The position numbers were made by a program, and so were the translations under genes. The notes under the pieces are model-generated. The model saw only the letters and a program-made list of their open reading frames with translations. It was not told the origin of the DNA and searched no databases. DNA of 64,000 nt, from assembly GCA_964057225.1 (NCBI GenBank), contig OZ059898.1:4898001-4962000 (forward strand), in the 5' to 3' direction. Of this stretch, positions 4,450 to 55,803 are shown in pieces (within the stretch, counting starts at the first letter, position 1; each line of letters begins with the position of its first letter). The DNA comes from Auanema rhodensis (taxonomy: Eukaryota > Animalia > Nematoda).

Positions 4450-6872
4450 ATGTCAAATGGAGGTATAATCATATACAATATATATAAATTTTATATAATA
4501 ATTATATAAATTTAGATGTTATAGCTGGAGCCATTTTAGGCATTTTTAACAATGTCTTTATTCTAATACTTGCTGCTATTTTTCTCATTTTTCATAGAAA
4601 AGAAATTATTTTAACTTTTAATAATTTACGGAATGGAGAAACTGATAATACTGTTCCATTGTCATCCAGGTTAGTACATTGCAAAAATTGAAAACTGCTA
4701 TGGAAGTAAGTGTGAAAGGAAAAAAGAGAGGAAAATTTCGATAAGCAATTGAAGAAGCATCAAAATGTGTCTGATAACGACGAATAATTACAGGGTACAT
4801 CCAGAAGAACATCGTTTAGAATCTGTTAAAGTAGAGCCGAATCGTTCAAGGTAAATTAAATATATTAGAAATACGAGAAAGTATGATTTTATATCTTTAG
4901 ATTCTCTGTCAGTCAAACGAAGCGAAATGCTGCTTTTGTCGATGCTGAGAGACCGACAGTAATACATCAACATCATGTATTTAGAGAAAATATTTAATTT
5001 TGATATATTACAATTTATTTTATAGAATGAAATAGAATGTGAACATGAGACAATAATTGTTCCTTTAGAAGAAAGAATATCAGAGGTTTTTATTTGAAAT
5101 TTTCTTTTGTTGCTTGACCAATTACCTTTAAGGCTACACTAAATATGGAAGAATCCGAAAACGTAGCACAATCATCATCAGTATGTGATAACAAATTATC
5201 AAACTCATATTTATGTATTCAGGTTGCGCATGTTCACACAGAGAACTTGAAAACAGTTTCGCGAGATTCAAAAACATCATATGAAGCTTTCATGGATGAA
5301 GTATTCTTGAATGAGCCATCTACTAAGCTCCAAGTTTTTATGACGGATAACACTGAAGCTGTTTATTCTTCTGGAGAATCAGATATCTCCCATGTTGGAA
5401 TACAATATGATACTCTACCCTATACGTATGACATGCCTCCAGTCAACTTATATGATGTAGTTGATGACCAGCAATATGCATATGACTCAGCCGATTCTTT
5501 AGATGACACCATTATCGAAGTAGTTCAAGATTCAGACATTCATGAATCAAATTTTGCCGATTTCACTGAAAGATTACATCACACCGACGATCTACCACAT
5601 ATACGATTTTCTGAAGTATTCAGCGCCGACATTCTCGATAAGATGAGTGCTAATGCTCATAGAGATTGGTTCTCACCTTATCAAGAATCATTTAAACATT
5701 TTAGTATTGTAACTGAATCACCAACTTTTGAGACGCATATTCATCTTGGTGCTAGTTACGATTCACCTCCCGATCAAACTGCATACGATAACATTCTAAC
5801 GTATACTCCAGATTTGCCTGAACACCCGATTTCTGATAGCGTTCACTTGTTTCATCACAAATCATATGGCTTAGATGAACACGTTGATAAATATTTTCAT
5901 GACGCTCTTCATGCCCATGCTGCTGATGAGCACATTATCGAAACCTCACCTTATCAACCTATTCATGGTTTCGTTGATATCTCTGCAAATGAGCTCCAAA
6001 CTAGAAGTGAAAATACGCCACTTCCGATTGACCATACACGCAGTAGCTCAGGTGGAAGTGTTGACGAGTGTTACATTGATAGTTCAATGTATAAAAGAAC
6101 GGATAGTAATCTAGATTCAATAGAAAGTTTTGGAGGATTCGTATCAGATTATTACACTCATGTTGAAGACTTATTAAGCAGATACGGACAAGTAATGTTC
6201 GAAGGACCATTATCATCAGTTCAAGTTCCAGAACAAACTTCTATTACCAAAAAAAAAATTGATACATCTCAGGATAATAAAACGTCTTTAGTTTTGGAAC
6301 CAATTATGGAACATAGCCATGAGGAAGAGAGCAGTATATACTCTTCGTCAACAACTATTCATGGCAAACAATTGGAGAAATCAGACGATAATCATACTCA
6401 CATTCAGCAATCATTAGAACAGTCTCCTGTCATAATAAAAAGTGACAATTATCATGACATTAGCACTGATAATAAGTCAGAAACAACTAAGAGTATTCAT
6501 ATATCAACAGTAACATCATCATCAGTTCATCAGGAGTCTGATTCTCATATATCAAATATTCCAGCTTTATCTTCTGTTGATACTATAAACACATTAACTA
6601 AACGAAATGCATTAATTCGCTCAGAGCACCAAAGCTTTGATAATGATATGAGCTATACAAGCGGATTGTATGATTCTACAGTAGAAGTACATACCTCAAC
6701 TTCACATAATGCTAATAGTTCTGATGATGACGATTTTGATCCTAATTATAAGCTTAATCTAATAAATCAATATGATTCTTATACTGCTTCTCATAATAGA
6801 TCTGATTATGAACCTTCTAGTTCTGATATATTTGAATGGCATTCTGAGGCTCTTGACTCTTTTGAACGTTAA
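4450..6872 (+). CDS. Single-pass membrane protein: N-terminal TM helix plus long acidic, Ser/His-rich low-complexity tail; unknown function
   Basis: The spliced model reads MSNG|DVIAGAILGIFNNVFILILAAIFLIFHRKE... Several short GT-AG introns join in frame to the 575-aa ORF 5145-6872. An upstream ATTTCAG acceptor lies near 4400. Confidence 0.7.
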
Positions 6873-15248: not shown

Positions 15249-18200
15249 ATGCTGTTCAAGGCTAGTATTTCGTCATCTCTCTATCTCTTTGTTAGCTTAT
15301 TTATTCTGAATTCTGTATCGGGACGACCAACAGATCGTCTTCTCACTTCTGATCAAGTTGATCTCCTTGTCTCAACTTCATCTACACATCATGATGTCTT
15401 GACACCAGGCTCCTCGACATCAGAATCTGAAACCACAGGAGCACATCAACGCCTTTATGGGACGTTCTCACCTGCTGGATTCAACTATGAAACCCAAGGA
15501 AATGTTGTTCAGGTACGTCAAAATTTAACATTTTGATACTATTTAATTACTTCATATAAATAATCAAAAAGAAAATTAAATTCCTGTGATAACTAAAATT
15601 AGTTTTCTATATTCAGTCTTAACCTAATGCCTAATCTAATTTCACTTTTTTCTTCAATTCCTTTTTGGTCGTAGTTTACTTATAAGTTTTCTCAAAATCT
15701 TCTATTCAGCATCTCTCCAAATATTTTCCTTCTCCTTTTTGTTGCAAAAAAAAATAAAGCTCGAATATAAAAACAAACAAATACTGAAAAGCCTAATGAA
15801 AACGCCAATAATCTGAAACGTCTGTGCCCAGCCGCCTGACCTTATACCCTAACTGTATCCGGCTGTTCACCTGTTGTATAAGCTCAAAAATCTTTTATTA
15901 TTCTCTCATTTCTTATTTAGCTATAATAAGACATTATTTCTCTGTTTTTTCTTATTTCTCTCTCTCTCAATCTCTAGATTTTCTATTATGTTTCTCTTTA
16001 TGTTGACACTGTTAAACGTAAACAGCTGTAACGTTCCACAGCACAGGAAACAGATGTCATCTCTCACATCGTTCGTGCTCCATTTTTTTCAAAAGCACTT
16101 AGCCTCTATAAAGCCTATCATCTCAATTTGCTTAAAAGGCTTTTCCTTTCTCCAATTTAAATTCAAATTTTGGAAATCATCTGCCTTCAAAATATAGTAT
16201 GAAATGTTGTTTGACACGAAATACTGAAACATTTTCTTGGCATAAGGCTTTCAGCAAAAGAAATTGCATTCAGTTACAGACGAAAGGCATAATCTTCGCA
16301 ATATAACTATGCTAACTATGTTGAAGATATTCATGACATTTGAATGCCGACCGTGCCTTCGCATCCTAAGCTGTTGCAACTAATTTCCATATGCAAAGAG
16401 GGGTGGAAAGAAAGAGAGCGAAGCTTTTTTTTGTCATTTTTTTCTCTCTGAATGTCTATGATACTTCGATGAATAGTTAGTTTTGTAACTTAACTATACA
16501 TCGAAATTTTGTTAATTTTCTCTGATGCAACATGGCTCAAGAATTAATGCAATTGCTGTAGTTAGACAGAAACCGATCATCTATCAAATTAGTTGCTATT
16601 GGGAAATCATTTATAAGAATATGTTTTACTATCTAGCAAATATAAAAGAAAAGATGAATACAAATGTCAAACTGACTGTATGAGATTGATCATTTTGCTT
16701 CTTCGAGACTTTTTTTGCCGATGGCCAACAGGAGATAAATGAAGTTCGGCTCTCTTTCTTTCAAATTGTCTCTCTTGTGCATATACTTTACTGAGCAGAT
16801 TCTTCATAAGATATTGCTTTGCTTCTCGCGTAGACAAAGACTAACAAGTTTTCTGGCAATATTCCAATATGTTGTCCCAGAAATTCAATGAAAATCTGAA
16901 AAACAGTTGATGCCATCTACGAGATGAGTAGGACGATGAAGATGTCAGTAGAATTTGTCTTTGTCTTCACCCTGCTGTTCCATCATCTGACAGTTTTTCT
17001 ACTACGGAGGCAGTTCATTAGTCTTCGTACTTGAAATCACTAAACATTTTTTCATAGTTCTCTAATTGTACTTATAAGATATATAATTATAATAATTTAT
17101 AATAATAATATTAAATATTTTTGTATTTTTATTCAAATTTATCGTTTTCACATCAAGTTTGTGTACCATGAACTTTTATCTTTATGAATAAGATATGCAT
17201 TCATATATACATACATATATATATTTATTGAATGAATATAATCCCATTCAAATACTACATATGACTTGCTTATTCGGTAACTTCTGATCGACAAATTCAT
17301 TCATCCTCGGTCTGTATCGACTTTTGTTCTCCATTTTTTTCCCTTTTCTTTGTCTTTTGCGCATGGCACAACCCATATGGACAGATAGCCAAACAACGGC
17401 GATAGCTCAAGTTCAAACGGAGACCTACGACGAGTTTGTTGGTGGAAAGCCCTTAGGGCATGCTGGCCGCAGTCTAAGTGGCCACCCATTCCGTCATAGA
17501 GGGAGAAAGCTGCGGAATTGTTCATCTTCTGCCTTCTTCACAAAACAATTCCCTGGAGCATCATTCAACAAGCAACATCTCAAGCAAACATTTAACTTTG
17601 TCGTCGGTCAATAGGCTTCTCTATTCGTCATTGTTGCCGCTTTCTATTTGGCTTAACACGTCTGAGGAAAAACTAGACGTCGTTTTTGGGGTTTGATATG
17701 TGCTTGCGTACAAAGCTCATCTAATCTCAGATGTTGCCAGCACCATTACATTTCTGTATAAGCGTGTAGCAATTGAATAAACAATTCTAAATGACGGATG
17801 GAATCGTTTTCGTCCAGTTCAGCTATAACCTCATGTTGCAACTTCTAGTACAAATTCCTCTACTCTTCTACTAAGCTCTTTCTTACTCGTTCGTTTCTTT
17901 TCTTCGTTTTCTGTCTCAGCTCTCCTTCCTCTCTTCTCTTCGCGCTTTCTTTGTACATCTCTCTGGCTACTGGTGCCTAATGGCATCTCAGAATTGAATT
18001 AAGCTCCATTTCAATAGCGACCACACACTGAACGATTGCATAGAAAACGAAAAGAAAAGACAAAACGGAAGATAGTAGCCCTTCTATGAGTTTCCTTGTC
18101 CGTCCATATAGAATTTTGACAAGATCCCATAACATACATACAGAAGGGGTGAAAAGGAAGACATAAAGTATGATGATATATGCTTTGAAAGAATTGCAAA

Positions 18201-21200
18201 TGAGGTTGCAAATAGATGTAGAACAACTTTTGGCTTGTTTGTATATTCACAAATTATATGAATATAAGTCAATTATAAGTTAGAAGAACAGCTGGGTCTA
18301 ATGTTCAAATCATGCTCAAGTATGATGCTCAAGTAAAGAATATAACAAAGTTACTTTAATGTACAATGAATAAGTTATAATATGTTATAAAAGATCTCAA
18401 CTTATATATAAGTATCCAACACTTATTACTAATGTCATAGATCTATTTTATTTTGTATAAAACGATCAAGAACAAATCAGCAAGTTTCCTAATACTCACT
18501 AATCCAGTTAAAGATGATTAAATACTTACTTCAATATAATACAAGTATTATGTGAGAGACATATCTATAAAGATGAGAAGACTATACCGATAGTTTTATA
18601 GTTTTCGGCTTACTTCAAGTATCTAATGTTATCCGTTGCAACAATTCAATAGTTGGAGCTACAAGCTCAAGAGGATTAACAAAATGAAATGAGATGACAA
18701 TTCGATTAGATGAGGACCTAATCTTCTAAATAATGTCGCCCCTGCTCAACTATATTCAACTATGTTACTATTCGATTAAAGTTCAAGTAAATGAAAAGAT
18801 AAACAAATTTTATATAAATAAAAAATATCACTACCGATCATTCTTTTATCTCTCAACTTCTCAGGATTAGTTTGAACATTGAAGAGAAGATGGTGCTTAG
18901 CTTTATCGGTTCACATAAATTAGTCACATTAAAAGATCCACTTATTCTCTTTTCACACACTTATACTAGCCTCGTGTGTATACATCTGTTACTTTCTGGC
19001 TTTTCTTTGATATTCAGATACCATTGAGTTCTTGCTACATTTTGAATATTCTGTCTGAAACGACCATGAGGACAACCTTTCCTTGATATATCTAGTTGAT
19101 TTAGATAGCCGACAAAACACCTAAGGACTTTAATTCAGAAGACACATGTCACCGAAACAAAAAAAGCTCTTTGATTTCCTCGTATCCGACATACATTTTT
19201 CTTGTTTATATGTATTTCTACTACTTACGATAACCTATGTGAAGTCTTTATTGCACTTTACACTTATCTCATTTTCGATTTTGAATGAAGCTAATCAAAA
19301 GAAAGATGAAGTAGAGAAAAGAGGAAAGAAAAGAACATTTCAAAGTGAAAATATAAAGAGAGAGAGAGAGAAAGATTATGTACATAAATACCTAGAGATA
19401 GAAGGGTACAGAGAGAGAAAGTAGGACCAAGTCAGAAAGCGAATAGTAATGACCAAGGACATCTGCGTTCTTGTCTCCGCTGCGATTTATGGCACCGTTG
19501 TCGTCGTAGTGCTGGTGATGATGTTGAGTGCAATGGTCGAACGGACGAAGTCACAATCATCATCAACACGAACAGGGACGATGATGTGAAGATGAATCAG
19601 GATAATGACATCTTTTATTGCTAATCCTCTATCTGTTAAAGCTGATAAATTGAAAGTTCATGTATCAAATACAGGAGAAGGATGCGACGAAGAGAAGATT
19701 TCAAAATTAAAACATATTCTCATAACTAAATCTAAAATGTATTATAATCATGCATAATTGAATAACTATAATTATTCACAAATTTTGTAATAAAAACGCA
19801 TAACACAAGCCTGTCGTATATTATTGTAATCCTTCCTGCTTACCATTATACCAAACTAATTCCAGTTCACAGCCGTATCATCGTTTTATATTCTTCTAAT
19901 TCTCTTCATTTTGTGCTCTCTCTTTTCCCATCCTCCCTCCTATTCTCGAATGATATACACAGATGTGTCGCTGTCGGCTTCTTTCATATCGTATTGAAGA
20001 CACAACAGAGCTAAATTTTACGACAACTTTAGACTTAGGCCTTGTTGATGAACATAAAATGCCCATCATTATCATCCGACCGTACGGATCTGCTGTCAAA
20101 ATTCAAAGATATGACCAATACATATGTATATACTGTAATATCTTAAGGGTCAAAATATTATTTTCAGAGAATAAATAGAAAAACAAAATAATATTTCTTT
20201 CAGTTGCTCATATATTATATTATAAGCAATCTGTTATACATTGGAAAACAATAAATTTTCACATTTGATTTTATAGATGGTTTTGTCGCAATGATGTCTA
20301 ACATTCTAACTCGACCTAATTCATTTGTTCAAGCTCATAAATAATCATCAATCACAACGAATTCAACATACAGTTTATGAAATATTTTTTATTAAAATTC
20401 TCTAAAAATGAATAAAACTAAAAATTTGTTTTTTATATTCATCATAATTGGGAAAAAACGCTAAAATCTTTTGAAATTTTGTCGATTGGTTCATTTCAAT
20501 AGCATATAAATCATTCTTTAGCCGAAATACATTGTATGATTTAGGACAAGATCTTGAGCTTCATATATAGATTCTTATATATGTATATAATTATTATAGA
20601 AAGAATTTTCAAGAATTTTATACCAAATAATAGTTTACACATTGTGTTTATATCTTCTTCTTCTTTATTTCTTTTTATATCTTTTTTTTTCTCTCATTTG
20701 CTTGATAGTTTTGTGGGTACGCGAGGAGCGAAGGGCCAAGTACTGAGTGTATGGCGGTTAGATCAAAGAAATTCGTTGAATGAGCGTTATTTATGGTAGT
20801 TTGTATGGCCTCTCTGGTGATGGTAGCCAAAACGGATCATATATATTGCAAGGGAAATATTTTCTTGAAGAAAGATTCTCGGATAAAATAATTCGTATTA
20901 ACAAACATGACACTTAACAGAAGAAAATCATTTAAAAATAGTATTGTATTCCAATAGTTATATTTATGTTGTTATAGGTATCATCTTTCCGTGCCTGTGA
21001 TGCTCGTCGAAAAGGGCTTGATAGAACCCTATTTGGACATGTAGCTGTAATTTTTGTTGATGAAGTTCAACCATTTTTAACTGGATGTGTAGCATTAGAT
21101 AACCAGGTAATTATTAATGAAACATCTTATAAAACTAATGTTTCACGATTTAGGCTCGATTTGCTGAGAAGTCTGGGGCTCTGGCTTTAGTAGTAGGGCC

Positions 21201-22475
21201 AGCCTCACGTGTACGTATGAGTTTGAAGCCATTAAAGGTATTGATGAACTAAATAAATTAGCTTACTTTGTTTTTTCAGTTGCGATCAGCTAGAATTCCT
21301 GTTGTTGTTCTGGATGACCAGGAGACAGAAAGCTTACGAAAATACGTTGCTGATGTTGCACAAACGGGACGTATAGCATCTATAAGTCTTCAGTATATTG
21401 AGCCTAAAATTGGTACAACTCAAGTATTGAAGTTGCAGGTGGAGTTTATTGATCATTTTAATTTTCAATTTTTATTATTTTAGGTTTTTCGACCAACAGC
21501 ACTTAATCTAGCCCTTATTGGCCTTCTTATTATTCTAGTTTTATTTATTACGGTTCTAGTATTTGTGAAAATTCGCTGGAGACCAACTGCCCATCGTGAT
21601 ATATGGTTAAGAACTTTGGCGCGTTCAGCAGTGAACAAAATGGAAATTCGTAAAATAGAAAAGGTTAGCATACAAAATATATTTGTACTCTTAAAATATT
21701 AAATTTAAGGGATCAAACACACGAAAAAAGCGAACCTTTTCACGTTTATCCAAAGCAAATGGTTTATCATACCTACCTGTATTTGGATCGTTGAGTTCTG
21801 TTGCAAATACAACGAATAGCCAAGTAAGTAAATTATTAAGTCGGGTTTGTAAAAAATTTTATATATTTCCTTTTTTTTAGGATCGCTGTGCAATTTGCTT
21901 GGATGAATATTGTGAAGGAGCTGAGCTACGTGTTCTTTTTTGCGGACATGAGTTTCATCCTAAGTGTGTTGATCCCTGGCTTCTAGCTAATCGGCGATGT
22001 CCACTCTGTCAATATGATGTCGTTTACAAACAATATCCAAAAACTGAAGAAACTCCCACAAATAACGCATCAAATAAACAGCATAGTTCACCGTCCCCTT
22101 CATCTTCGTCATCCCCTTCATCAACAATACAAAACCGTGTCCAAGCCGAAGCAAGGGAACCATTATTACCACTGGTTGAGCCAACAAGTCCCGTAAGAAC
22201 AGCGGCGCCACTTTCTCTGACCAGCGCTACAGTTCTTCCCGAGCAAGCTCTTCCATGTGTAGCATCTCAGAGACATCGCAGGCAGCTTACAAACCCTCGT
22301 GCTAGATCTCTACCGCGTAGACGGCCTTTACGCCCACGAAGCTTCCTAGAAACAGCTGTAAGAGTCGGGGGGTAAGAATTCTTTATCATTCAAGCAATTA
22401 AAATGTTATTTTAGCTACTCATCAGATGTGTCATCCTATATGGAACGTGACAATGGACCTCAAATCATATTGTGA
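15249..22475 (+). CDS. plr-1: PA-TM-RING E3 ubiquitin ligase, RNF43/ZNRF3-like Wnt-receptor antagonist
   Basis: Signal peptide exon 15249-15512, then a 5.5-kb first intron. PA-like domain ([23 protein letters not shown]...IPVVVL), TM helix ([20 protein letters not shown]), RING-H2 (CAICLDEY...[23 protein letters not shown]) and a Ser/Pro-rich tail. Stop at 22473-22475. Confidence 0.88.
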
Positions 22476-22883
22476 TTGCTGCTGCTAACTTCTCAAAAAC
22501 CATGTTTCCTTTCCATCAACCGGTGCTTAGTTATCAGTATTTTCATTACGGGTTGTGTTGAATTATCAAATATAGAGGTTTTCCCTTTATGGTTCATATG
22601 TTTTAACTTACTTAAGTCGCAAAATATTTACGGGTGATATGACTTGTCGTTTGTCTCACTAACTTCATGATAACTTTTCCAAAATGTTTATTTTAATTTA
22701 ATAATAATGTATTTAACTTTTTCATTACACTGTTCATATTACCTGTTTATATATATAGTATATATAGTTCAAGTCCAATGAATAGGTAATTTCGTAAAGA
22801 AACATGTTAGAACATAACTTTATACAGCAAAATTCACAGAAATTCATGCATTATAATAATATGTATATTAGTTATGAAAACAC

Positions 22884-23875
22884 TTATTGAATTAGAGATT
22901 GATATGTAGACTGGAACCAATCTTGTACGTCTTGCAATGTCTAAATCACGATATTAAAAAACGTTTGCTAAGAGAATAAAACGAATAATTTTCAGTAATT
23001 CTAATATAAAGCTTCAAATAACCTTGTCGGCACCCCATTCTTTAGCCTTACGAGCAAGAGCTTCTTTGAATTTCTTCCATAACTCCTTAATTTTTTTAAG
23101 TCCACCACACTTGAAATCGCATTCCTTAAGAAAATACAGAAATTAGTTTATATCAACACTTTTTTACTTTTTCAATGGCAGAGCAGTCGAATGGGGCGTC
23201 TTTCCCGCAATCACTATTTATGACATAATTATTACTGTAACTGCTCAACTGTGTACAATTGAATGAAGTATTTCCTTCAACATCAATAGCCTAAAAAGTT
23301 GTAAACTGTCTGATAAACTCGAGTTTGCTTTTCAATATATTTACTTTGACATCAGGGAAATAAGCTTGCAAGATTTCTGCTGAGGGTAGATTCACCATGT
23401 TGTTGCAAGGAAGAGCTAAAAAACATCAAACATGTTGGAGTGTTGCTAATCATAAATTATGCCTAGGATTTCAAAGCCGGGCATTGGTTTCTTAGGAAGG
23501 CTGACTTCAGTTCTTTCACCCGATTCACATCGTATAAGAGGATTTCCTTCGTCCAATTCGCAAATGCAATCATCTAGACAAGAAACAGTCGGAATATTCG
23601 CCGATTCTAAAATAAAACATCAATTTTAACTACTACAGGTATCATTAATTAGAAATAAGAGGGAGGAATGCATTCAAAAATATTATTTTCTGCAAAAATA
23701 GTTGAGAACAAAGAATCTGTCTAACCCAATTTAGTATATTCCCCCCTATTCTATTTCTTCAATTTCAGTCAGATGATTGTAAAATATAATTGTGTAGGAC
23801 ACCAGACGGACTAAAGCATAACCATATGGCCAACAGAAGATTTAGAATAACATTTCCTGAAGATCTAGCATTCAT
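22884..23875 (-). CDS. Small secreted Cys-rich protein (LRRNT-like cap plus short LRR-like segment, helical C-terminus)
   Basis: Six exons give MNARSSGNVILNLLLAIWLCFSPSE-SANIPTVSCLDDCICELDEGNPLIRCESG...LPCNNMVNLPSAEILQAYFPDVKAIDVEGNTSFNC...TLQDVQDWFQSTYQSLIQ*. The model includes one GC-AG intron. Confidence 0.75.
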
Positions 23876-45809: not shown

Positions 45810-48800
45810 TTAGTTCCACTCCTCTTCTGGGACTCCTTCCATTTTGTCTTGTTCCAATGTAGAGTCGCTTACAATTTGAGAAGACCAGCTACATTCTACT
45901 TGTTTCTTAACAGTTTGTTCTTCAATTGATTTTGCTACTTCTGGGATGTTCGATTTTTTTGCTAGTTGTGTCAACACAGGAGCAGGAGCACCTGGAGAAA
46001 TGATATATAATGATAAAAAAGAAAATGAAAGAAAACATACTAATTGCAGATACCCCATTTGGCTTCAAGCTTGCAAAGTTAGGAGCGCGTTCATCACCAG
46101 AGAGCCATTCATCCGCAGTTAGAGTTGGTTCCCAAGTTACTAAAGCATCTGGGAACAGATCAGTTTGGAACCCATCTTTCTAAAATTGTGAAATAAACAC
46201 AGACATTCATCCATTAACAACCTTAATACGAGGAACACGGAAAATCATTAATTCCAATGTCTTCTCAGTAAGTCTCCATGCACGTTGGAATTCCACAGCC
46301 ATGACATCACACCTAAAAACAACAATGCAACAACGTTTGTTAAATGAATTATTTTCATACATTTTCTTGTCATGGAATGCTATTGACTGACATCCAGTTT
46401 CTCCCTTATAGTCAGTGAGGGAAAGGAAGTAGGGTGAATCAAAACATACTTCGAACATACGTAAAGTTTGGTCACCCTGTAAAACTTGTTGTGAAAATAA
46501 AAATATGATAACAACCTTTCCGCCTAAGAAAAGAACGCTTGTATCGTAATCGTAATGAGGAATCAGAGGCTGAGTGGCATTGTCAATAATTTCAACATGA
46601 ATCTGTTGTAAAGTTTGAGCATCCAAAAGATACACTTGTCTTGTTGAACTCCGTGTGAATCCGACAACAATAATGGCACGATCATCACAAGCAAATAGAA
46701 CTCTAGCAGCTCTAGCATTTTCGAGAACCTATTTGGATAAGTTATATGAATAATTTAAAAAAAAAGTTACCTTTCGTTGTCGTATCAGACAATCTTCTCC
46801 TAATTGAGGTTGATGAACATTAAGCATAAAGTCTTTACCGAGAGATGCCAAAAATCTTCCGTCTGCACTCCAAGAAATCGAAAGAATAGCTCCAGAGTGA
46901 GAACAGATCCTACACCAGAGACGTAGATAAGAATTACATATTGAACAACTTACTTCAATTTTTTGGTGCAAGTGTTTGTATCCCACAATTCAATGGAAGC
47001 GTCAGCTAAAGCTACAGCTAAAATTCCAGAAGCCAAAGGATGCCAGGACACGCAAGAAATCTTTTCGCCTCCGGTAGATAATACTTTGGAAGGCTGCATT
47101 TCATTGCGAGCACCATCGGTTGTAGAGAACTTCCAAATATTCAAAATTCCAACGTCTGTACCGCAAGCAAGTTCAGTGTCATCAAATGGATTCCATTTCA
47201 AATCGGTAACAGGAGCTTTATTGAAAACACCATCCATAACTCCGTCAGGAAGTTTGCAAGGATCCTGAATATTGTAGATACCAACAACTCCTGCGGGGCC
47301 ACTCAATGGAACGGCAACAAACTTCAAAAACAAAATTAAGGGAAGTAAAGAAATCGTCATACCTGTCCACTTGCACAAGCGCCATTAGACTCGGGTGGAA
47401 GTCTGGTGTTCACATTTCTAAGATTACTGAAAACCGAATTATTCGCTTTTATTCCAACTATGGTTTCCACATAACGGAATTTAGATCTGACTAAACCAAC
47501 AACACAAGACTTTGGCCTTTCTCTTGTTGAAAGGGGTCTTGTACTTCCAGTAGCTAATGATGAAACATTATTTTATTATAGAAAACATGTCTTACTTGGT
47601 GGAGATGTTCGTAATCTAACTAAAGCTGGTTCAACCAACGGTGGCGAGATAGGTTTACGATTTTCTTTTGAATTATCTTCCGACTTAGTCTTAGATGAAA
47701 ATGTAAAACTATAATAGAAAATAAAACAATACCTCAGTTTTATGTTCAACAGTCTGAGATGAGCGTTCAGCCGGCTGAGTTGGAGCTTCTGATTGAGGAT
47801 AAACAATTTCCCTAACTTCAGACTTAACAGGTTTAGGCTCCTGAAAATGATAGAGCTCAAACATGTTGGAATAAAGAGCAATACCTCAGGTTGCACTTTA
47901 GGAGCTGTTGTTGTTCTGACCATAGGAACTGTAGCAGCTTCTGGCTTGGGAGGAGTTGGTTCTTGTGGAGGAGGTGAAGGATTTCCAACGGGAGACAATG
48001 ACATTTTAGCCGGCTAAAGAAATTTTATAATGAAACATCGACAGTTACTAACTAGTTTATCAGAACCAGAGAACCATTCTTCAGAAGTACATCCTGCTTC
48101 ACTACCCATAGTATCGGGGAAGAGATCAGCATGGAATTCCCGATAAGACTAAATTAGTTAGCTTTCTCGGATAAAAAGAAAACTAAGAACTTACTCTTCT
48201 TGGCACAATGCAAGACACCGGCAAAATTGAAGTTTTTGTCAATTGATAAAAAGTATCAACTTCGCCATCCATCACATTTACAGATTTCTTCGAACCTAGG
48301 CACGATCCCAAAGTTTGCTCGGCTAGGGTAGTTTCATAAACTACAAACAAATATCAGATAAGAGAGAATTAGCAAGAAAATACCTGAAGACATCATTGGT
48401 TGTCTATCCTGCATTTCCATGAGGAACATTTTGTTAGTGCCCTTGCCAGCAAGAAACACAAGCTTAGTATCTTCATCATAGTGAGGAATTAAAACACCAG
48501 TAGTCGACACAAACTCCTAAATAAAATCAAAATAATTTTCTAAGGTTATGAGAAACCTGGGTATGGATGGGTGAATTCCATTTATTAGTTTCATATACAA
48601 GAACTTCTTGGACACGTTTCTGAAAAATACTTTATGATAGTTTATGTGAGAGTAAAAACATACGTTAGTAAAACCACTTGAAAGCAGTCGGTCACCGCAA
48701 AATAGGATGCGACCTTCTCTTCCCATTCCTTGATGAAGAGGCATTACTTTAATTGGATTATGCCCCGTACGAATATCATAAATGCAACCCTAAACCAAAT

Positions 48801-50252: not shown

Positions 50253-53200
50253 ATGAAGGTGAGTTAAATGTCAATATTACCATTAATAATGATTATTTCA
50301 GTTGGCTATTACACTATATATTCTTTCTATATTTTTTGGAGTTAAGAATGTCATTCAAGCATTCTCAGCATGCCCACAACAATGCTTATGTTCAGAAAAC
50401 AACATGGTTTGCTCGTAAGTTGATTCAGACTTCCAAACAAAATTACGATGAAATCCTTAATAAACTAAGATAATATTAGCTAGTATACCTCATAATTCAA
50501 GGTTAGTAGTTTAAACAGCAAATATCAATTAATACTCATATGCAACAAGCAAAACGAATAACGTATTGCTCATCTATTAAACAAGAAAAGTCCGTTTGTT
50601 AACAAGCTAATATCGGATTACCGCAAACAGATTAATAAAGAATCGCGGTGTAGAATAGGTAGGCCTAACGAATATGTAGCTAAAAGCAAAACAATATTCA
50701 CGATTCTTATGAACTTTCGCAAAATTTGGCACTTTTAAAAAACAAAAAAGTTTAACAAAAAATAATTAAGTCTAATTCTTCAGAGGCTTTATGAATTTGC
50801 CTATAATATTGGTAAAATCATGCAAACCACATTGATGGTCCAGTTTTCTTGTCAAACATTTGTAAGCTATTTATATTTAATATAGTAAACATTAAGAAAA
50901 TATAATAAATATTAATAGAAAGTAATCCCTGCTCTTCAAAAATAAATTTCTCCATAAGTTGAAGTAATCTAGCTAATAGAGATTAGAGAATTTCGCGCCG
51001 TCTAGGCGGGAAAATTAGTTTTTCAACAGCGCGGGACATCTCAATTCGGAAAACATATGAGTTCAATTCATTTAAGATAATATTTCTTCTTCTTTTGATA
51101 TATTTATGAAACAAAAAGGTTATGTGGAAATTGTTGTAAGAATTGTAAGCTAGATCGGTAAAAAAATTATACATGAGAAAACAATGGTTAATTTAGACAT
51201 GTCTGTTTTTATATAAATGCTGATATTCTCAAAATAACACCCTCGTAATTTTTTTTCGTTAGTGAAGTGGTAGGCCTTCGTAAGTCATGTGTTAGAATGT
51301 GCATCCAATGCGTTTCATACGTTAAAAAACAAATCTGAGTCAGGGATGTAGAAATGGAAACAGATAAGACATTAGTCTACATTCGATGAGTCATTGTGGG
51401 ATCTAGTCTCAGTAGCGTTATTCATAATTTGATAAGAAAGTGATGAGATGAAACCAATATAATATATTTAAAATTTTTACATTCATAACGGCAGCGGCAG
51501 TTAAAAAAACATTTTTATGATAGCAAAGTGTAAAGAAAGAAAAAATATATCCATAGATGAATACAGTTTTTGGCTTTTGAAAAGTATTGCACTGTCAGGA
51601 ATATCTTGTGGAGCTGTCTTTTTTTTTCGTGGCATGCAACATAAAGTATGACGAAGACAATACACGATTGCAATACCGGTTTGTATTAAGTATCTGATGT
51701 TTTGATGTATAAAGTTTACAATGGATCCTATTCCACGCTTTGAGGGCAATCTTAGACATGGCGAAATAATCTTACTCTTCTTGGCCAACATTGAACATAA
51801 AATTATATCCAATATGGAAAAAAACCGACAATGTTAGTTTCTTGTGCGATTGAAAACTGTCTGAATATCGGATATTATTACGTAAAATGCAGTACATAGA
51901 AACGATTGTAAACATGTTTAATTCAATAAGCGAACACCAAATTAATTACTATCTTATAGATGCGAATCAGCCCCATCCACAGAACTTACACTGTCTTCCC
52001 TCGGTGGATTTTATATCAAATCATTAACTATTCACTCTTGTTCAAAAGTAACAATTTTGAATGGAACCTTTAACGGAGTTGTTATATTGGATCGTCTATC
52101 ATTCATACACATTGGTATATTTACAATAATTTTGATTTTAAAAAAATTTTTAGATCGTTTGATTTTGGAACCACATGCTTTCAAGGGAACATTGCAATCT
52201 CCAAAACAACTAATAATTGAACAAGTAAAAAGAAAAACAGTACGGGATTAATAATGAATAATGATTCAGAGCACTATACCGATTTTGATGACTGGTGCAT
52301 TCACTGGATTGTCGCATATGGAGCATATATGGATACGCCAGTCAACTATTCACACGATAGCTTCTTTTGCGTTCCAATACGTTACGGATGTCAACTATTT
52401 ATATTTTCGGGAGAGTCATATTCGGCATTTACAAAAACATGCATTCGGTGAGTCAATACACCTAGTACATTCAAGAACATGAGCATACAAGTTGCGAGTT
52501 ATATTGATTTTTTTATTTTAAGGTAACATGTTTGATGTTCGCAATATATATTTCCGAGGGAGTGTTGAAATAGATGATAGTGAGCGCGAACTATTTGTGA
52601 ATTCAACTATAGATGAACTACAATTTCATGGAGTGATAGGACAGTTGAACGAGGGATTTCTACTAGGTTCCACGATGCAGTATACAACCTTGTCTGGATG
52701 TGTTCTTAAGCTATTCAGACGAGGTGAAGTGTATGAAACGGAGAATACTCCTTTAATAGGAATATCAAGACTTAATATCATAAATAGCACTTTGAACGCG
52801 TTCTCTCCAATATTATTTTCGCACTTCAGTCCAATTAGCATATCAAAAAGCCGAATTGGAAAGCTCCGAGGAAGTGATGTTCATTATGCACATCATTACT
52901 TGTCGCTTCTTATAGAGGATTCGACGATAAACTCAATTGAATCATTTTCTATGAGTCACTCGATTATCAAAACAATTTCGCTGATCAGGACAAAGATAAG
53001 CAATATAAGTGGAGCCGCTTTATTGGGTAGCCAGATCGTGCAGATGTTGATATCACAGTGCGATTTGAAGACAATTCAAAGCACATGCTTTTCGGAATCA
53101 GTTATTGAAGAATTTTTCATCAAAAATAGTAACGTTGGACTTATACAATCAAATGCCTTTGAAAGAGCAATCCTCCGTCAAGCTAATATAGAAGGATCAA

Positions 53201-55803
53201 CTATTTCAAGAATTCAACATGCAGCTTTTCATAAAGGAGCAATTCATCTACTTGAGCTGAACACCTCAATTATTCATTCGAGGGACATTTCAGATGCTGG
53301 ACCATTCTCCAATTGCGAGGTAAGCAAACTTCAGATTTCTACTTTACTGCACTAAAATGATACGCATTGTTGGCTAGATAACCCTACTAGAGAAACTATT
53401 ATGAACAGCAAATTTAGAAATCCAATTTTTTCGCTGGCCATGCATAAAAATCTTTCATTTGAAAAATAAGACTGAGAGAGAATTCCAAGGCTTCCAGACC
53501 TGTTTTAAAATAACAAACAGAAGACAAAAAATAACAGAGTGAACTCGCGAAGTTCCTATCTGAATCATTGCTTTGAAGTAAAATATATTAAAGCGTTTTA
53601 TATTGATATAAACAGCAAAACGGAAGAATTGCTCAGCTAAAATTCACAAATTTTTGCCAGCAGTGTGCGATGATAGAAGTTGCCGTGAACTTCAAAAACC
53701 AACAGAAAAGGAACAGAAAAGCAAACAAACTAGTTTACGATATAATAACAAAAAAAAGTTTAGAATATAAGACGCCTTGAATTAACCCCATTTTGAGCAA
53801 TTTTTAAGTAATTATGAGTATTTTAGGAATTAAGAAGCATAATTAACTGGAATACTATACATGTTAAAAAATAAAAATTCAAACTTATTTTTAAAAAAAA
53901 TCGTGAAACGAAATCAGCACATTTTTCTTCTTAAGAAGACATAGCGACTTTTTCAAAAGTCTGTCAACATGAGGAGAAACCGAACAAAAATGGTCAGAGG
54001 TGGCTTGATGCTCCTTCATCGTCTTTTTCAAAATGCTCTCACCATCCACGACCCTAGTTAACAAACATTCGGGTCCAAATCGCAAAGCTGAAGAATGAGA
54101 TTTCGATGAACAAACAACAACATAGAATTAAATGTTAAAATACCATACAATTCTTAAAGAAGAATGCATGCTTTTATAATTTACAGATTGGACAAGCAGT
54201 AATCAAAAATTGTGCATTCGAAGGAGAGAATATCAAATACTTTTTCCGTCATTTCGAACCAGTAAGTAACCTTATGATATAATTCAGAAAATTTTTCACA
54301 ATTAATTTTGAGGTACGCCTAACAATATCTAATTCGAATTTTGAATGTGTTCCAACCGATTGTGAATTCAATAGTATGATAATCAATCCACCGCAGCATC
54401 ATTTATTTTGGAAAATAGAAGGAAATACATGTAAAATTAAATCGAATCATACTACAGATCAGGTAAAAATTATAAAATGAATTGTTTTCTATAAGGTCGC
54501 ATTGGGAAATGACTCGTCATTGTAATTTCAAATTGTACGCAACAAGCGGTTGCATTCACCAAGTATTATTGACTCACAAATAAAATAAGCTTAAAAAAGA
54601 AATTCTGAATGAGTACCAGCGATTGTACAAAAGGTTTTATAGTTAAATAAATGTGAATTTCAGTTGTGCAAAGAGCCAAAAATTAGTGAATATGAAGGAG
54701 TTATATGTCGAGAAAATTGGGCAATTTCTGATTGTGAATGTATTAGTCCAGTCGTTTCCTTACCAACAGCGATAAAAACCACCGTTGCTGTCATAGGCGA
54801 TTGTGGAGAATTGGTAGTAAATACAACAGAAACTTTCGGTAAGTATATTTTTCGATTTGTTTGGGAAAAAACGAATAAAAGCTTGTGGTTTGGGCTATTG
54901 GATCACTCGATTGTTTTTTCAGCTTGTTTAATATATTGACATAATTTTCAAAAGTATATGAAAATTGTGGTTAAATATAAATATTCAATTTCAGAAACAG
55001 AAGGCATCAAACTTCTTTACATGTACAGAATAAAGAAAAATGAGTTAGTAAAATTGCCATCTAAGCTAAAAGTCTTAAGCATTTTCCATTCGAACATTAA
55101 TTTTAGGTAAATTTTACTAGTTTAGCTTAGCCTCTGATAAAACCTTTAAGATACGGTTCGTTGAAGCCAAGCAAGATAACCTCTATCGCAATTCAAAATA
55201 GTAAGCTAGTGGAGATGGAGAAAGGATCATTGGCCCATCTGACAATAGGCGTTTGGACAATGAAGAATATTTATCAAAGCGAAATGAGCGATGCAGCTCT
55301 AGAAGGAACAGTTATTGGTTATATCATTTATATAGATATCCTTTACTTTGAAATGTTTATAGGTACACTTTCAATAAATGGTAGTCGATTAGAATCGTCA
55401 GGGGCATTATTTAGGAAATCTCTTCATGTTCATATGGAAAATAGTTTATTATTCTCAGCTGATGGTATGACCTCTGTACGCTCAGCACATTTTGCTAATA
55501 ACACCATTCTATGTTGTTGTGGAACTGAAGGTAGGAAAGGTTTAGATTATTGTGAAATTCATGACAAACAAGAAAACTGTTTTTTCTCTCCAAATTAAGG
55601 CAATTAAACATCAAAATTGTTGTAACTTATTTGCAGAATGCTCAAGAACTGCTCTGAAGTGTGGACAGATTTTTCCTCAGACCCGCTGCTACCAAGCTAG
55701 CCGAATCATTCAACAAACATCTTCAAGTTCCTTGTTAAGTTTGGCTACCTTCATATTTCCAGCTTGGATGATTTCTTACGGATATATATTGTTAATAGCA
55801 TAA
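50253..55803 (+). CDS. Extracellular LRR / beta-helix surface protein with C-terminal hydrophobic (GPI or TM) tail
   Basis: Signal peptide, CPQQCLCSENNMVCSC cap, many I..I...AF repeats (including the 275-aa ORF 52528-53355), Cys-rich linkers and a hydrophobic C-terminus. Confidence 0.78.

What the first reader, a model, noticed from the sequence alone, without database searches (positions are those of the whole stretch)
22515..22640. plr-1 3'UTR carries two miR-51/miR-100 seed sites within a tight cluster of other miRNA seed matches
Seen: TACGGGT, the complement of the miR-51/miR-100 seed ACCCGUA, occurs at 22547-22553 and 22629-22635. Two copies of a CpG-containing 7-mer within 90 nt of AT-rich UTR is unlikely by chance. 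Nearby are CCGGTG (22520-22525, miR-35-family 6mer), GGTGCT (22522-22527, miR-49/83 i.e. miR-29-family 6mer) and CAGTATT (22535-22541, miR-236 i.e. miR-200/miR-8 7mer). Known: PLR-1 is the RNF43/ZNRF3 counterpart that removes Frizzled receptors, and human miR-100 has been reported to repress ZNRF3 and raise Wnt signalling. Inference: an ancient or convergent miR-100-family control of the Wnt-receptor ligase may operate in nematodes.
Basis: partly seen in the sequence, partly recalled or inferred. Interest (0 to 1): 0.7.

Follow-up and report, generated by a model that had tools for sequence, protein, structure and literature searches.

The report
Conserved miR-51/100 site in plr-1 UTR
Just after the stop codon of a worm gene that removes Wnt receptors from the cell surface lie two short matches to the ancient microRNA miR-51/miR-100; the six-letter core of the first is kept in all ten related worms examined, so it is probably a real but untested regulatory site.

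Summary
TACGGGT lies at 22547-22553 and 22629-22635, which is 72 and 154 nt after the stop codon (22473-22475) of a PA-TM-RING-H2 gene. That gene is the PLR-1 (RNF43/ZNRF3) orthologue. The genome is not C. elegans: it is a 181-Mb Auanema-like rhabditid.

I fetched plr-1 orthologue loci from Auanema JU1783, five strongylids, two Caenorhabditis cDNA contigs and Pristionchus. Of all 4096 six-mers, ACGGGT (the complement of miR-51/100 nucleotides 2-7) is the only one found within 300 nt of the stop in all ten species. It is also the only invariant run in the alignment, and it was never shared in 3000 shuffles.

The full 7-mer and the second site are shared only with the congener Auanema JU1783. 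There they sit in near-perfect islands, while the intron and the start of the UTR are unalignable. CAGTATT (miR-236) is kept in Auanema and four of five strongylids. CCGGTG and GGTGCT are kept only within the genus.

No conserved RNA fold, Rfam family or repeat explains the block. Still unproven: the poly(A) site in this genome, the presence of the miRNA gene in this genome, and any repression. plr-1 is absent from the published list of miR-51-family targets. Verdict: a probable, unreported target site of a known kind. The scan's only other note on this is the same stretch.

The parts
15297..15515 (+). Upstream coding exon of the plr-1 orthologue (matches residues 14-85 of the Auanema JU1783 protein P0009), followed by a ~5.4-kb intron
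   Evidence: tblastn of P0009 against the window, collinear hits
20978..22372 (+). Remaining coding exons: ectodomain, transmembrane segment (exon about 21487-21663) and RING-H2 finger with tail (21884-22372)
   Evidence: Exon translations; Pfam zf-RING_2 at 1.7e-9; tblastn at 67-90% identity
22416..22475 (+). Last coding exon, [19 protein letters not shown], with stop TGA at 22473-22475
   Evidence: Translation; a near-identical terminal peptide in Auanema JU1783
22518..22572 (+). Conserved 3'UTR island 1 (about 55 nt), nearly identical in Auanema JU1783. It holds CCGGTG, GGTGCT, CAGTATT and the first TACGGGT
   Evidence: Pairwise alignment A2: perfect runs here, while the intron and the first 40 nt of the UTR do not align
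22535..22541 (+). CAGTATT, a 7mer-m8 match to the miR-236 (miR-8/200 family) seed. It is kept 5-6 nt upstream of ACGGGT in Auanema and in 4 of 5 strongylids
   Evidence: miR-236 sequence printed in PMC2824724
22547..22553 (+). Site 1: TACGGGT, a 7mer-m8 match to the miR-51/miR-100 seed. Its core ACGGGT (22548-22553) is invariant in all 10 clade-V species compared
22614..22652 (+). Conserved 3'UTR island 2, shared only with Auanema JU1783. It surrounds the second site and a conserved TGACTTGTCG run
   Evidence: Alignment A3; motif search in the other loci found nothing
22629..22635 (+). Site 2: TACGGGT, a 7mer-m8 match specific to the Auanema lineage
23014..23127 (-). Last coding exon of the convergent neighbour gene (stop at 23014-23016), syntenic in Auanema JU1783. 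It bounds the intergenic space at 538 nt
   Evidence: tblastx between the two downstream regions and a minus-strand translation

Best explanation
The stretch is the proximal 3'UTR of the plr-1 orthologue of an Auanema-like nematode. PLR-1 is the RNF43/ZNRF3-type transmembrane RING ligase that clears Frizzled receptors from the cell surface. The UTR carries canonical seed-match sites for the miR-51/miR-100 family. Site 1 descends from a site already present in the common ancestor of the clade-V nematodes compared here (Auanema, Strongylida, Caenorhabditis, Pristionchus), where its constant core is the 6-mer ACGGGT. In the Auanema lineage this site was strengthened to a 7mer-m8 and a second 7mer-m8 was added 82 nt downstream. 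Inferred mechanism: Argonaute loaded with the abundant miR-51-family miRNAs pairs with these sites and lowers plr-1 mRNA stability or translation through the usual GW182/deadenylation route. That would cap PLR-1 dosage and so tune how much Frizzled/Ror/Ryk stays on the surface. The adjacent conserved CAGTATT may be a second input, from miR-236. Shown here: sequence, position, gene identity and conservation. Inferred: the UTR extent in this genome, the identity of the trans-acting factor, and repression.
For: ACGGGT is the only one of 4096 6-mers present within 300 nt of the stop in all 10 species and all 4 lineages. It is the only invariant run in the 10-species alignment. The chance of it per UTR is 0.003-0.07, and it was never shared by four lineage representatives in 3000 dinucleotide shuffles. 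It equals the complement of nucleotides 2-7 of miR-51 and of miR-100. No printed miRNA fits the neighbouring registers. In the two Caenorhabditis cDNA contigs the site lies inside the plr-1 transcript, about 75 nt before the contig end; an AATAAA signal precedes that end in L006. Both window sites sit in near-perfect islands against Auanema JU1783, although the intron and the start of the UTR do not align. There is no consensus RNA structure, and the window UTR folds no better than shuffles, z = +0.78. There is no Rfam family, and the stretch is single-copy. The miR-51 family acts through seed-matched sites on signalling genes, and Frizzleds mig-1 and lin-17 are predicted targets. Human miR-100 is reported to target ZNRF3.
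Against: In 8 of 10 species the site is only a 6-mer, with A or G at position 8 and no A at position 1; this is the weakest canonical class. plr-1 is missing from the alphabetical list of TargetScanWorm miR-51-family targets in PMC12407057 and from its text. I could not locate a miR-51/100-family gene in this genome, though these searches are weak. The Auanema islands are conserved well beyond the seed matches, so other factors must also read them. C. elegans itself, and clades other than V, were not tested conclusively. Dirofilaria has no ACGGGT within 700 nt of its annotated stop, but its gene end is doubtful.
Confidence: 0.6

Rival explanations
1. The conserved islands are read mainly by one or more RNA-binding proteins, or by another unknown trans-factor. 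On this view the match of the ACGGGT core to the miR-51/100 seed is a coincidence.
For: Between the two Auanema genomes conservation covers about 55 nt and about 40 nt, far more than two seed matches. Position 8 of the site varies (T, A or G) and position 1 is never A. The site is only a 6-mer in most species. plr-1 is not a listed miR-51 target.
Against: Across the four lineages the invariant run is exactly the 6-mer complementary to seed nucleotides 2-7, and both flanks vary, which is the signature of a seed site. By my estimate, the chance that the single best-conserved 6-mer equals the 2-7 match of one of a few dozen ancient miRNA families is about 1-3%. I know of no nematode RNA-binding protein with an ACGGGU motif (own knowledge).
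Confidence: 0.22
2. The element serves the opposite strand. It would be part of the 3'UTR of the convergent neighbour gene or of an antisense transcript, so the + strand seed matches would be irrelevant.
For: A convergent gene ends 538 nt downstream in the window, and likewise in Auanema JU1783 and Parelaphostrongylus. No strand-specific RNA data are available for this genome.
Against: The element always lies 70-250 nt after the plr-1 stop in all ten species. It lies inside plr-1 cDNA contigs in Caenorhabditis. A minus-strand AATAAA (TTTATT at 22687-22692) would end the neighbour's UTR before it reaches either site. The neighbour has its own conserved block nearer to its stop, at 22891-22943.
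Confidence: 0.05
3. The matches are chance seed matches without function, picked out after the fact from an AT-rich UTR.
For: Seeds were chosen post hoc from more than 100 families. The 6-mer matches CCGGTG and GGTGCT are what chance gives and are not kept outside the genus.
Against: The unbiased 6-mer census and the shuffles single out ACGGGT. Both TACGGGT copies and CAGTATT sit in conserved islands, whereas neutral sequence is saturated.
Confidence: 0.04
4. The island is a structured cis-acting RNA element: a stem between the CCGGT and ACGGG runs with CAGTATT in the loop.
For: By eye, CCGGTG/TACGGG in Auanema versus CCGGTT/AACGGG in strongylids looks like a G-U to U-A exchange.
Against: The putative 6-bp stem has a central G-G mismatch. 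RNAalifold predicts no pair at all on the 10-species alignment. The window UTR is no more stable than shuffles. Caenorhabditis and Pristionchus keep ACGGGT without the CCGGT partner. There is no Rfam match.
Confidence: 0.04

Closest known systems
Validated and predicted 3'UTR targets of the C. elegans miR-51 family (hst-3.2, kal-1, lin-12, cdh-3; predicted mig-1 and lin-17 Frizzleds), Sci Adv 2025, PMC12407057
   Same: Same miRNA seed; seed-matched sites in the 3'UTRs of cell-signalling and adhesion genes; site conservation across nematodes; the Wnt pathway is among the predicted targets.
   Different: plr-1 is not in that paper's text or in its list of TargetScanWorm targets. In most species here the site is only a 6-mer, which TargetScan does not score (own knowledge). 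Nothing has been tested experimentally.
Human miR-100 repression of ZNRF3 (with DKK1) in cetuximab-resistant colorectal and head-and-neck cancer cells (Lu et al. 2017, as summarised in PMC9544809)
   Same: Same ancient miRNA family, and the target belongs to the same orthology group of Frizzled-clearing RING ligases. The predicted outcome is also the same: more Wnt signalling.
   Different: It was described in human tumour cells. Whether the human and nematode sites are homologous or convergent was not tested here and cannot be tested with these tools.
Deeply conserved miRNA-target pairs such as let-7 with lin-41 (cited in PMC12407057)
   Same: A short seed-match island persists in an otherwise unalignable 3'UTR over long evolutionary distances.
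   Different: Those pairs have genetic proof and usually 7-8-mer or compensatory sites. Here the constant part is a 6-mer, and conservation is shown only within clade V nematodes.

Membership tests
Canonical miRNA seed-match site (miR-51/miR-100 family) | Contiguous Watson-Crick complement to miRNA nucleotides 2-7 (6mer) or 2-8 (7mer-m8) | tested here: met
   TACGGGT occurs twice in the window. ACGGGT is present in all 10 species. Seeds were checked against printed miR-51 and miR-100 sequences.
Canonical miRNA seed-match site (miR-51/miR-100 family) | The site lies within the 3'UTR, between the stop codon and the poly(A) site | tested here: inconclusive
   The sites lie 72 and 154 nt after the stop, with no poly(A)-signal-like hexamer before site 1. 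The site is inside plr-1 cDNA contigs in two Caenorhabditis. No reads exist for this genome, so the poly(A) site here is inferred.
Canonical miRNA seed-match site (miR-51/miR-100 family) | The seed match is conserved more strongly than its flanks across species | tested here: met
   It is the only invariant run in A1, the unique top 6-mer of 4096, and was shared in 0 of 3000 shuffles.
Canonical miRNA seed-match site (miR-51/miR-100 family) | The cognate miRNA is encoded and expressed in the same organism | tested here: inconclusive
   Neither RF00104, nor five mature-sequence patterns with 3 mismatches, nor several gapped patterns found a convincing hairpin in G000. The tool scores few candidates, so absence is not shown. 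The family is reported as conserved across eumetazoans.
Canonical miRNA seed-match site (miR-51/miR-100 family) | Argonaute occupancy and site-dependent repression | not testable with these tools
   This needs CLIP or chimera data, or reporter and mutant assays. The ALG-1 chimera paper (PMC5074850) is not held.
PLR-1 / RNF43 / ZNRF3 transmembrane E3 ligases | Cytoplasmic RING-H2 finger | tested here: met
   Pfam zf-RING_2 at 1.7e-9 and zf-rbx1 on exon 21899-22375.
PLR-1 / RNF43 / ZNRF3 transmembrane E3 ligases | Extracellular domain, then a single transmembrane helix, then the RING, alignable to ZNRF3 | tested here: met
   A hydrophobic segment lies in exon 21487-21663. The window gene is collinear with the Auanema protein P0009 over residues 14-484. 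P0009's best solved match is ZNRF3 (8xfp_C), 8.8e-23, over residues 64-357, spanning ectodomain to RING. Pfam found no ectodomain family on the single exons. The exons were searched singly; the joined protein was not built or searched.
PLR-1 / RNF43 / ZNRF3 transmembrane E3 ligases | Orthology to nematode plr-1 | tested here: met
   The same family contains proteins that their sources name plr-1 (P. pacificus), BMA-PLR-1 (Brugia malayi) and Zinc/RING finger protein 3 (Ascaris suum). The C. elegans protein itself was not retrieved.
PLR-1 / RNF43 / ZNRF3 transmembrane E3 ligases | Lowers the cell-surface level of Frizzled, Ror and Ryk | not testable with these tools
   Known for C. elegans PLR-1 from the literature (reviews found). 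Not tested for this species.

The most novel reading that the evidence does not exclude
Control of the Frizzled-clearing ligase (PLR-1/ZNRF3/RNF43) by the miR-100 family is an ancestral bilaterian link. On this reading it has been kept from nematodes to humans and forms one arm of a miR-100 circuit that sets Wnt-receptor dosage by acting on both Frizzleds and their ligase.
Probability: 0.1. Interest if true: 0.8.

Novelty: new member of a known kind. Interest (0 to 1): 0.5.

Why it matters
miR-100 is the oldest animal microRNA, and its direct targets were largely unknown until a 2025 study of the worm miR-51 family. That study pointed to cell-signalling genes, including Frizzleds, but not to plr-1. 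A seed match kept in the plr-1 3'UTR across ten clade-V nematodes would add the receptor-clearing ligase to that network. The same miRNA family would then act on both the Wnt receptors and their remover. It would also give a nematode counterpart to the miR-100-ZNRF3 link reported in human cancer cells. The prediction can be tested directly in C. elegans with the binding-site-mutation and compensatory-miRNA strategy already published. It also shows that conserved 6-mer sites, which standard target lists omit, can mark old regulatory links.

Tried and rejected
- **Relatives by whole-genome search:** none exist in the collection.
- **Cognate miRNA gene in G000:** Rfam RF00104 gave 5891 candidates, 60 scored, no match, and the controls did not ring either.
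  - Mature miR-100, miR-51, miR-52, miR-56 and miR-55 with 3 mismatches, and a degenerate core pattern, gave no hits.
  - ACCCGTAGNTCC gave 3 hits; the one whose context I read (L012) looks coding, and none of the three loci has an Rfam match.
  - The hairpin-type gapped pattern gave one weak hairpin (L015, z = -1.3) and one palindrome.
  - The cluster-type patterns found a tRNA-like sequence and DNA with no evident hairpin.
  - Overall this is inconclusive.
- **RNA-structure reading:** no consensus pairs and no excess stability.
- **Known RNA family:** none.
- **Repeat or mobile origin:** single-copy, and no longer repeat.
- **Other miRNA registers** (seeds ACCCGUU, AACCCGU): no printed miRNA starts that way.
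- **ALG-1 chimera paper:** not held.
- **Two orthologue look-ups** (Nippostrongylus, Diploscapter): no record found.
- **Dirofilaria:** no ACGGGT within 700 nt of its annotated stop, but its C-terminus differs from all the others, so this says little.
- **Exon handling:** the spliced protein was never joined. Exons were searched one by one by reference.

Full report
**1. The observation**

The + strand carries TACGGGT at 22547-22553 and 22629-22635 and nowhere else in the 64-kb window. Two further copies lie on the - strand, and 1.41 copies are expected for both strands together.

I checked the seed assignments against printed sequences. miR-51 is UACCCGUAGCUCC... (PMC12915212). miR-100 is AACCCGUAGAUCC... 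and miR-236 is UAAUACUGUC... (PMC2824724). So TACGGGT is a 7mer-m8 match to the miR-51/100 seed, and CAGTATT is a 7mer-m8 match to miR-236.

The two TACGGGT copies are not part of a longer direct repeat. The stretch 22476-22700 is single-copy in the genome.

**2. What the gene and the genome are**

The window is G000 contig 6, 4,898,001-4,962,000, in a 181-Mb assembly of 112 contigs. It is therefore not C. elegans.

The exon at 21884-22372 carries a RING-H2 finger (Pfam zf-RING_2, 1.7e-9). The exon before it carries a hydrophobic transmembrane stretch. The last exon, 22416-22475, ends [19 protein letters not shown] with stop TGA at 22473-22475.

The exhaustive protein search found the nearest representative to be a 485-aa protein of Auanema sp. 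JU1783, P0009. It is 69% identical over the whole RING/tail exon. tblastn of P0009 against the window gives a collinear gene at 15297-15515, 20978-22372 and 22416-22469.

The family contains proteins that their sources name plr-1 (Pristionchus pacificus), BMA-PLR-1 (Brugia malayi) and Zinc/RING finger protein 3 (Ascaris suum). P0009's best solved relative is human ZNRF3, at 8.8e-23 from ectodomain through RING.

I searched the exons one at a time by reference. The joined protein was not built or searched.

**3. Conservation**

I fetched the DNA around plr-1 orthologues from these species (cDNA attribution):

- Parelaphostrongylus, Dictyocaulus, Oesophagostomum, Haemonchus and Ancylostoma (Strongylida)
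- Auanema JU1783
- two Logan cDNA contigs that cluster with C. brenneri and C. remanei
- P. pacificus
- Dirofilaria

In every clade-V species, ACGGGT lies after the stop at these offsets:

| Species or group | Offset after stop |
|---|---|
| Window | +73, and again at +155 |
| Auanema JU1783 | +71, and again at +209 |
| Strongylids | +93 to +125 |
| Caenorhabditis cDNAs | +216 and +221 |
| Pristionchus | +244 |

A census free of any miRNA list gave the key result. Of all 4096 6-mers, ACGGGT is the only one present within 300 nt of the stop in all ten species and all four lineages. The runners-up are overlapping words (CGGGTT, AACGGG) and words from CAGTATT.

In the MAFFT alignment of the ten sites, the only invariant run is A-C-G-G-G-T. 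In dinucleotide shuffles the chance of ACGGGT per UTR is 0.003-0.07. It was never shared by four lineage representatives in 3000 trials, for four different choices of representatives.

The base 5' of the core, which pairs with miRNA position 8, is T only in the window and in Auanema JU1783. It is A or G elsewhere. The base 3' of the core is T, G or C, never A. So the deep element is a 6-mer site, and the 7mer-m8 form and the second site are features of the Auanema lineage.

**4. Within Auanema**

Against JU1783, the last intron and the first 40 nt of the UTR are essentially unalignable. Positions 22518-22572 are nearly perfect: runs of 25, 10 and 13 identical bases hold CCGGTGCT, CAGTATT and TACGGGTT. 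A second island, about 22614-22652, surrounds the second TACGGGT and a conserved TGACTTGTCG run.

CAGTATT is also kept, 5-6 nt upstream of ACGGGT, in four of five strongylids. CCGGTG becomes CCGGTT there, and GGTGCT is lost. The miR-236 match is therefore a reasonable second candidate site. The miR-35-type and miR-29-type 6-mers are not supported beyond the genus.

**5. Alternatives tested**

- **Structure:** RNAalifold finds no consensus pair. The window UTR folds no better than shuffles, z = +0.78. A stem seen by eye between CCGGT and ACGGG has a central G-G mismatch, and its 5' arm is missing in Caenorhabditis and Pristionchus.
- **Known RNA family:** none matches.
- **Opposite strand:** a syntenic convergent gene ends at 23014-23016. 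A minus-strand AATAAA at 22692-22687 would end its UTR short of both sites. In Caenorhabditis the site lies inside plr-1 cDNA contigs, and L006 ends about 15 nt after an AATAAA.
- **Other miRNA registers:** no printed miRNA begins NACCCGUU or NAACCCGU.
- **Poly(A) signal before the sites:** no poly(A)-signal-like hexamer precedes site 1. The AATATA between the two sites is not conserved in JU1783. The UTR therefore probably runs past island 2.

**6. Weak points**

- I could not find a miR-51/100-family hairpin in this genome. The search tool scores few candidates, and family members differ outside the seed, so this is not evidence of absence.
- A 6-mer is the weakest canonical site class.
- plr-1 is absent from the text of the 2025 miR-51-family study. 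It is also absent from its alphabetical list of TargetScanWorm targets, which runs ...pdi-6, plx-1.... That fits a 6-mer-only site in Caenorhabditis (TargetScan does not score 6-mers, own knowledge), but it also means there is no published support.
- Dirofilaria shows no site, but its annotated gene end is doubtful.

**7. Mechanism and context**

The most likely reading (about 0.6) is canonical repression of plr-1 by the miR-51 family through these sites. The family is abundant, broadly expressed and dose-sensitive. It acts through seed-matched targets in signalling and adhesion genes, and Frizzleds mig-1 and lin-17 are predicted targets; the Wnts egl-20 and lin-44 are also flagged in the supplement.

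PLR-1 is the nematode RNF43/ZNRF3 homologue (reviews found). Y47D3B.11, which I know as plr-1 (own knowledge), rises after Wnt-pathway activation in C. elegans. The same miRNA family may therefore damp both the receptors and their feedback remover.

Human miR-100 is reported to target ZNRF3. Whether that reflects common descent is open; I put it at about 0.1.

**8. Verdict**

This is a new, so far unreported member of a known kind: a conserved miRNA seed site. It is of moderate interest because it links the oldest animal miRNA to a central Wnt-receptor regulator, and it can be tested directly.

Noticed in passing
window 22891-22943 (L004 10270-10322): A third conserved non-coding block, shared with Auanema JU1783, lies 70-120 nt beyond the stop of the convergent neighbour gene. 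It is presumably an element of that gene's 3'UTR.
   Followed up: no
L001, L002, L003, L005, L007, about +273 to +298 after the plr-1 stop: All five strongylid plr-1 UTRs share (T)CTAGTC. From memory this is the complement of the miR-44/45 (miR-279 family) seed. It is absent from Auanema, Caenorhabditis and Pristionchus.
   Followed up: partly
window 22640-22652: TGACTTGTCG(TT), just downstream of the second TACGGGT, is conserved with Auanema JU1783. It matches no miRNA seed that I know and is absent from the other species.
   Followed up: partly
window 15516-20977: The plr-1 orthologue has a first intron of about 5.4 kb in an otherwise compact gene. Its content was not examined.
   Followed up: no
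window 5145-6872 (+): An uninterrupted 575-aa ORF encodes an acidic, Ser/Asp/His-rich protein with no Pfam family.
   Followed up: partly
window 46207-48004 (-): Three ORFs of exactly 142 aa lie in a row. One of two scanned gives weak WD40 / beta-propeller matches, so they may be exons of one WD40 gene or a tandem repeat.
   Followed up: partly
window 52528-53355 (+): A 275-aa ORF has a BspA-type leucine-rich repeat match (PF13306, 1.5e-7), a family more usual in bacteria and protists.
   Followed up: no
L017 (G000:C6:11462482-11462667, -): Two ACCCGTA words 165-195 nt apart begin a tRNA-like sequence (by eye; not checked with a tRNA finder), which suggests a small tandem tRNA array on the same contig.
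   Followed up: no
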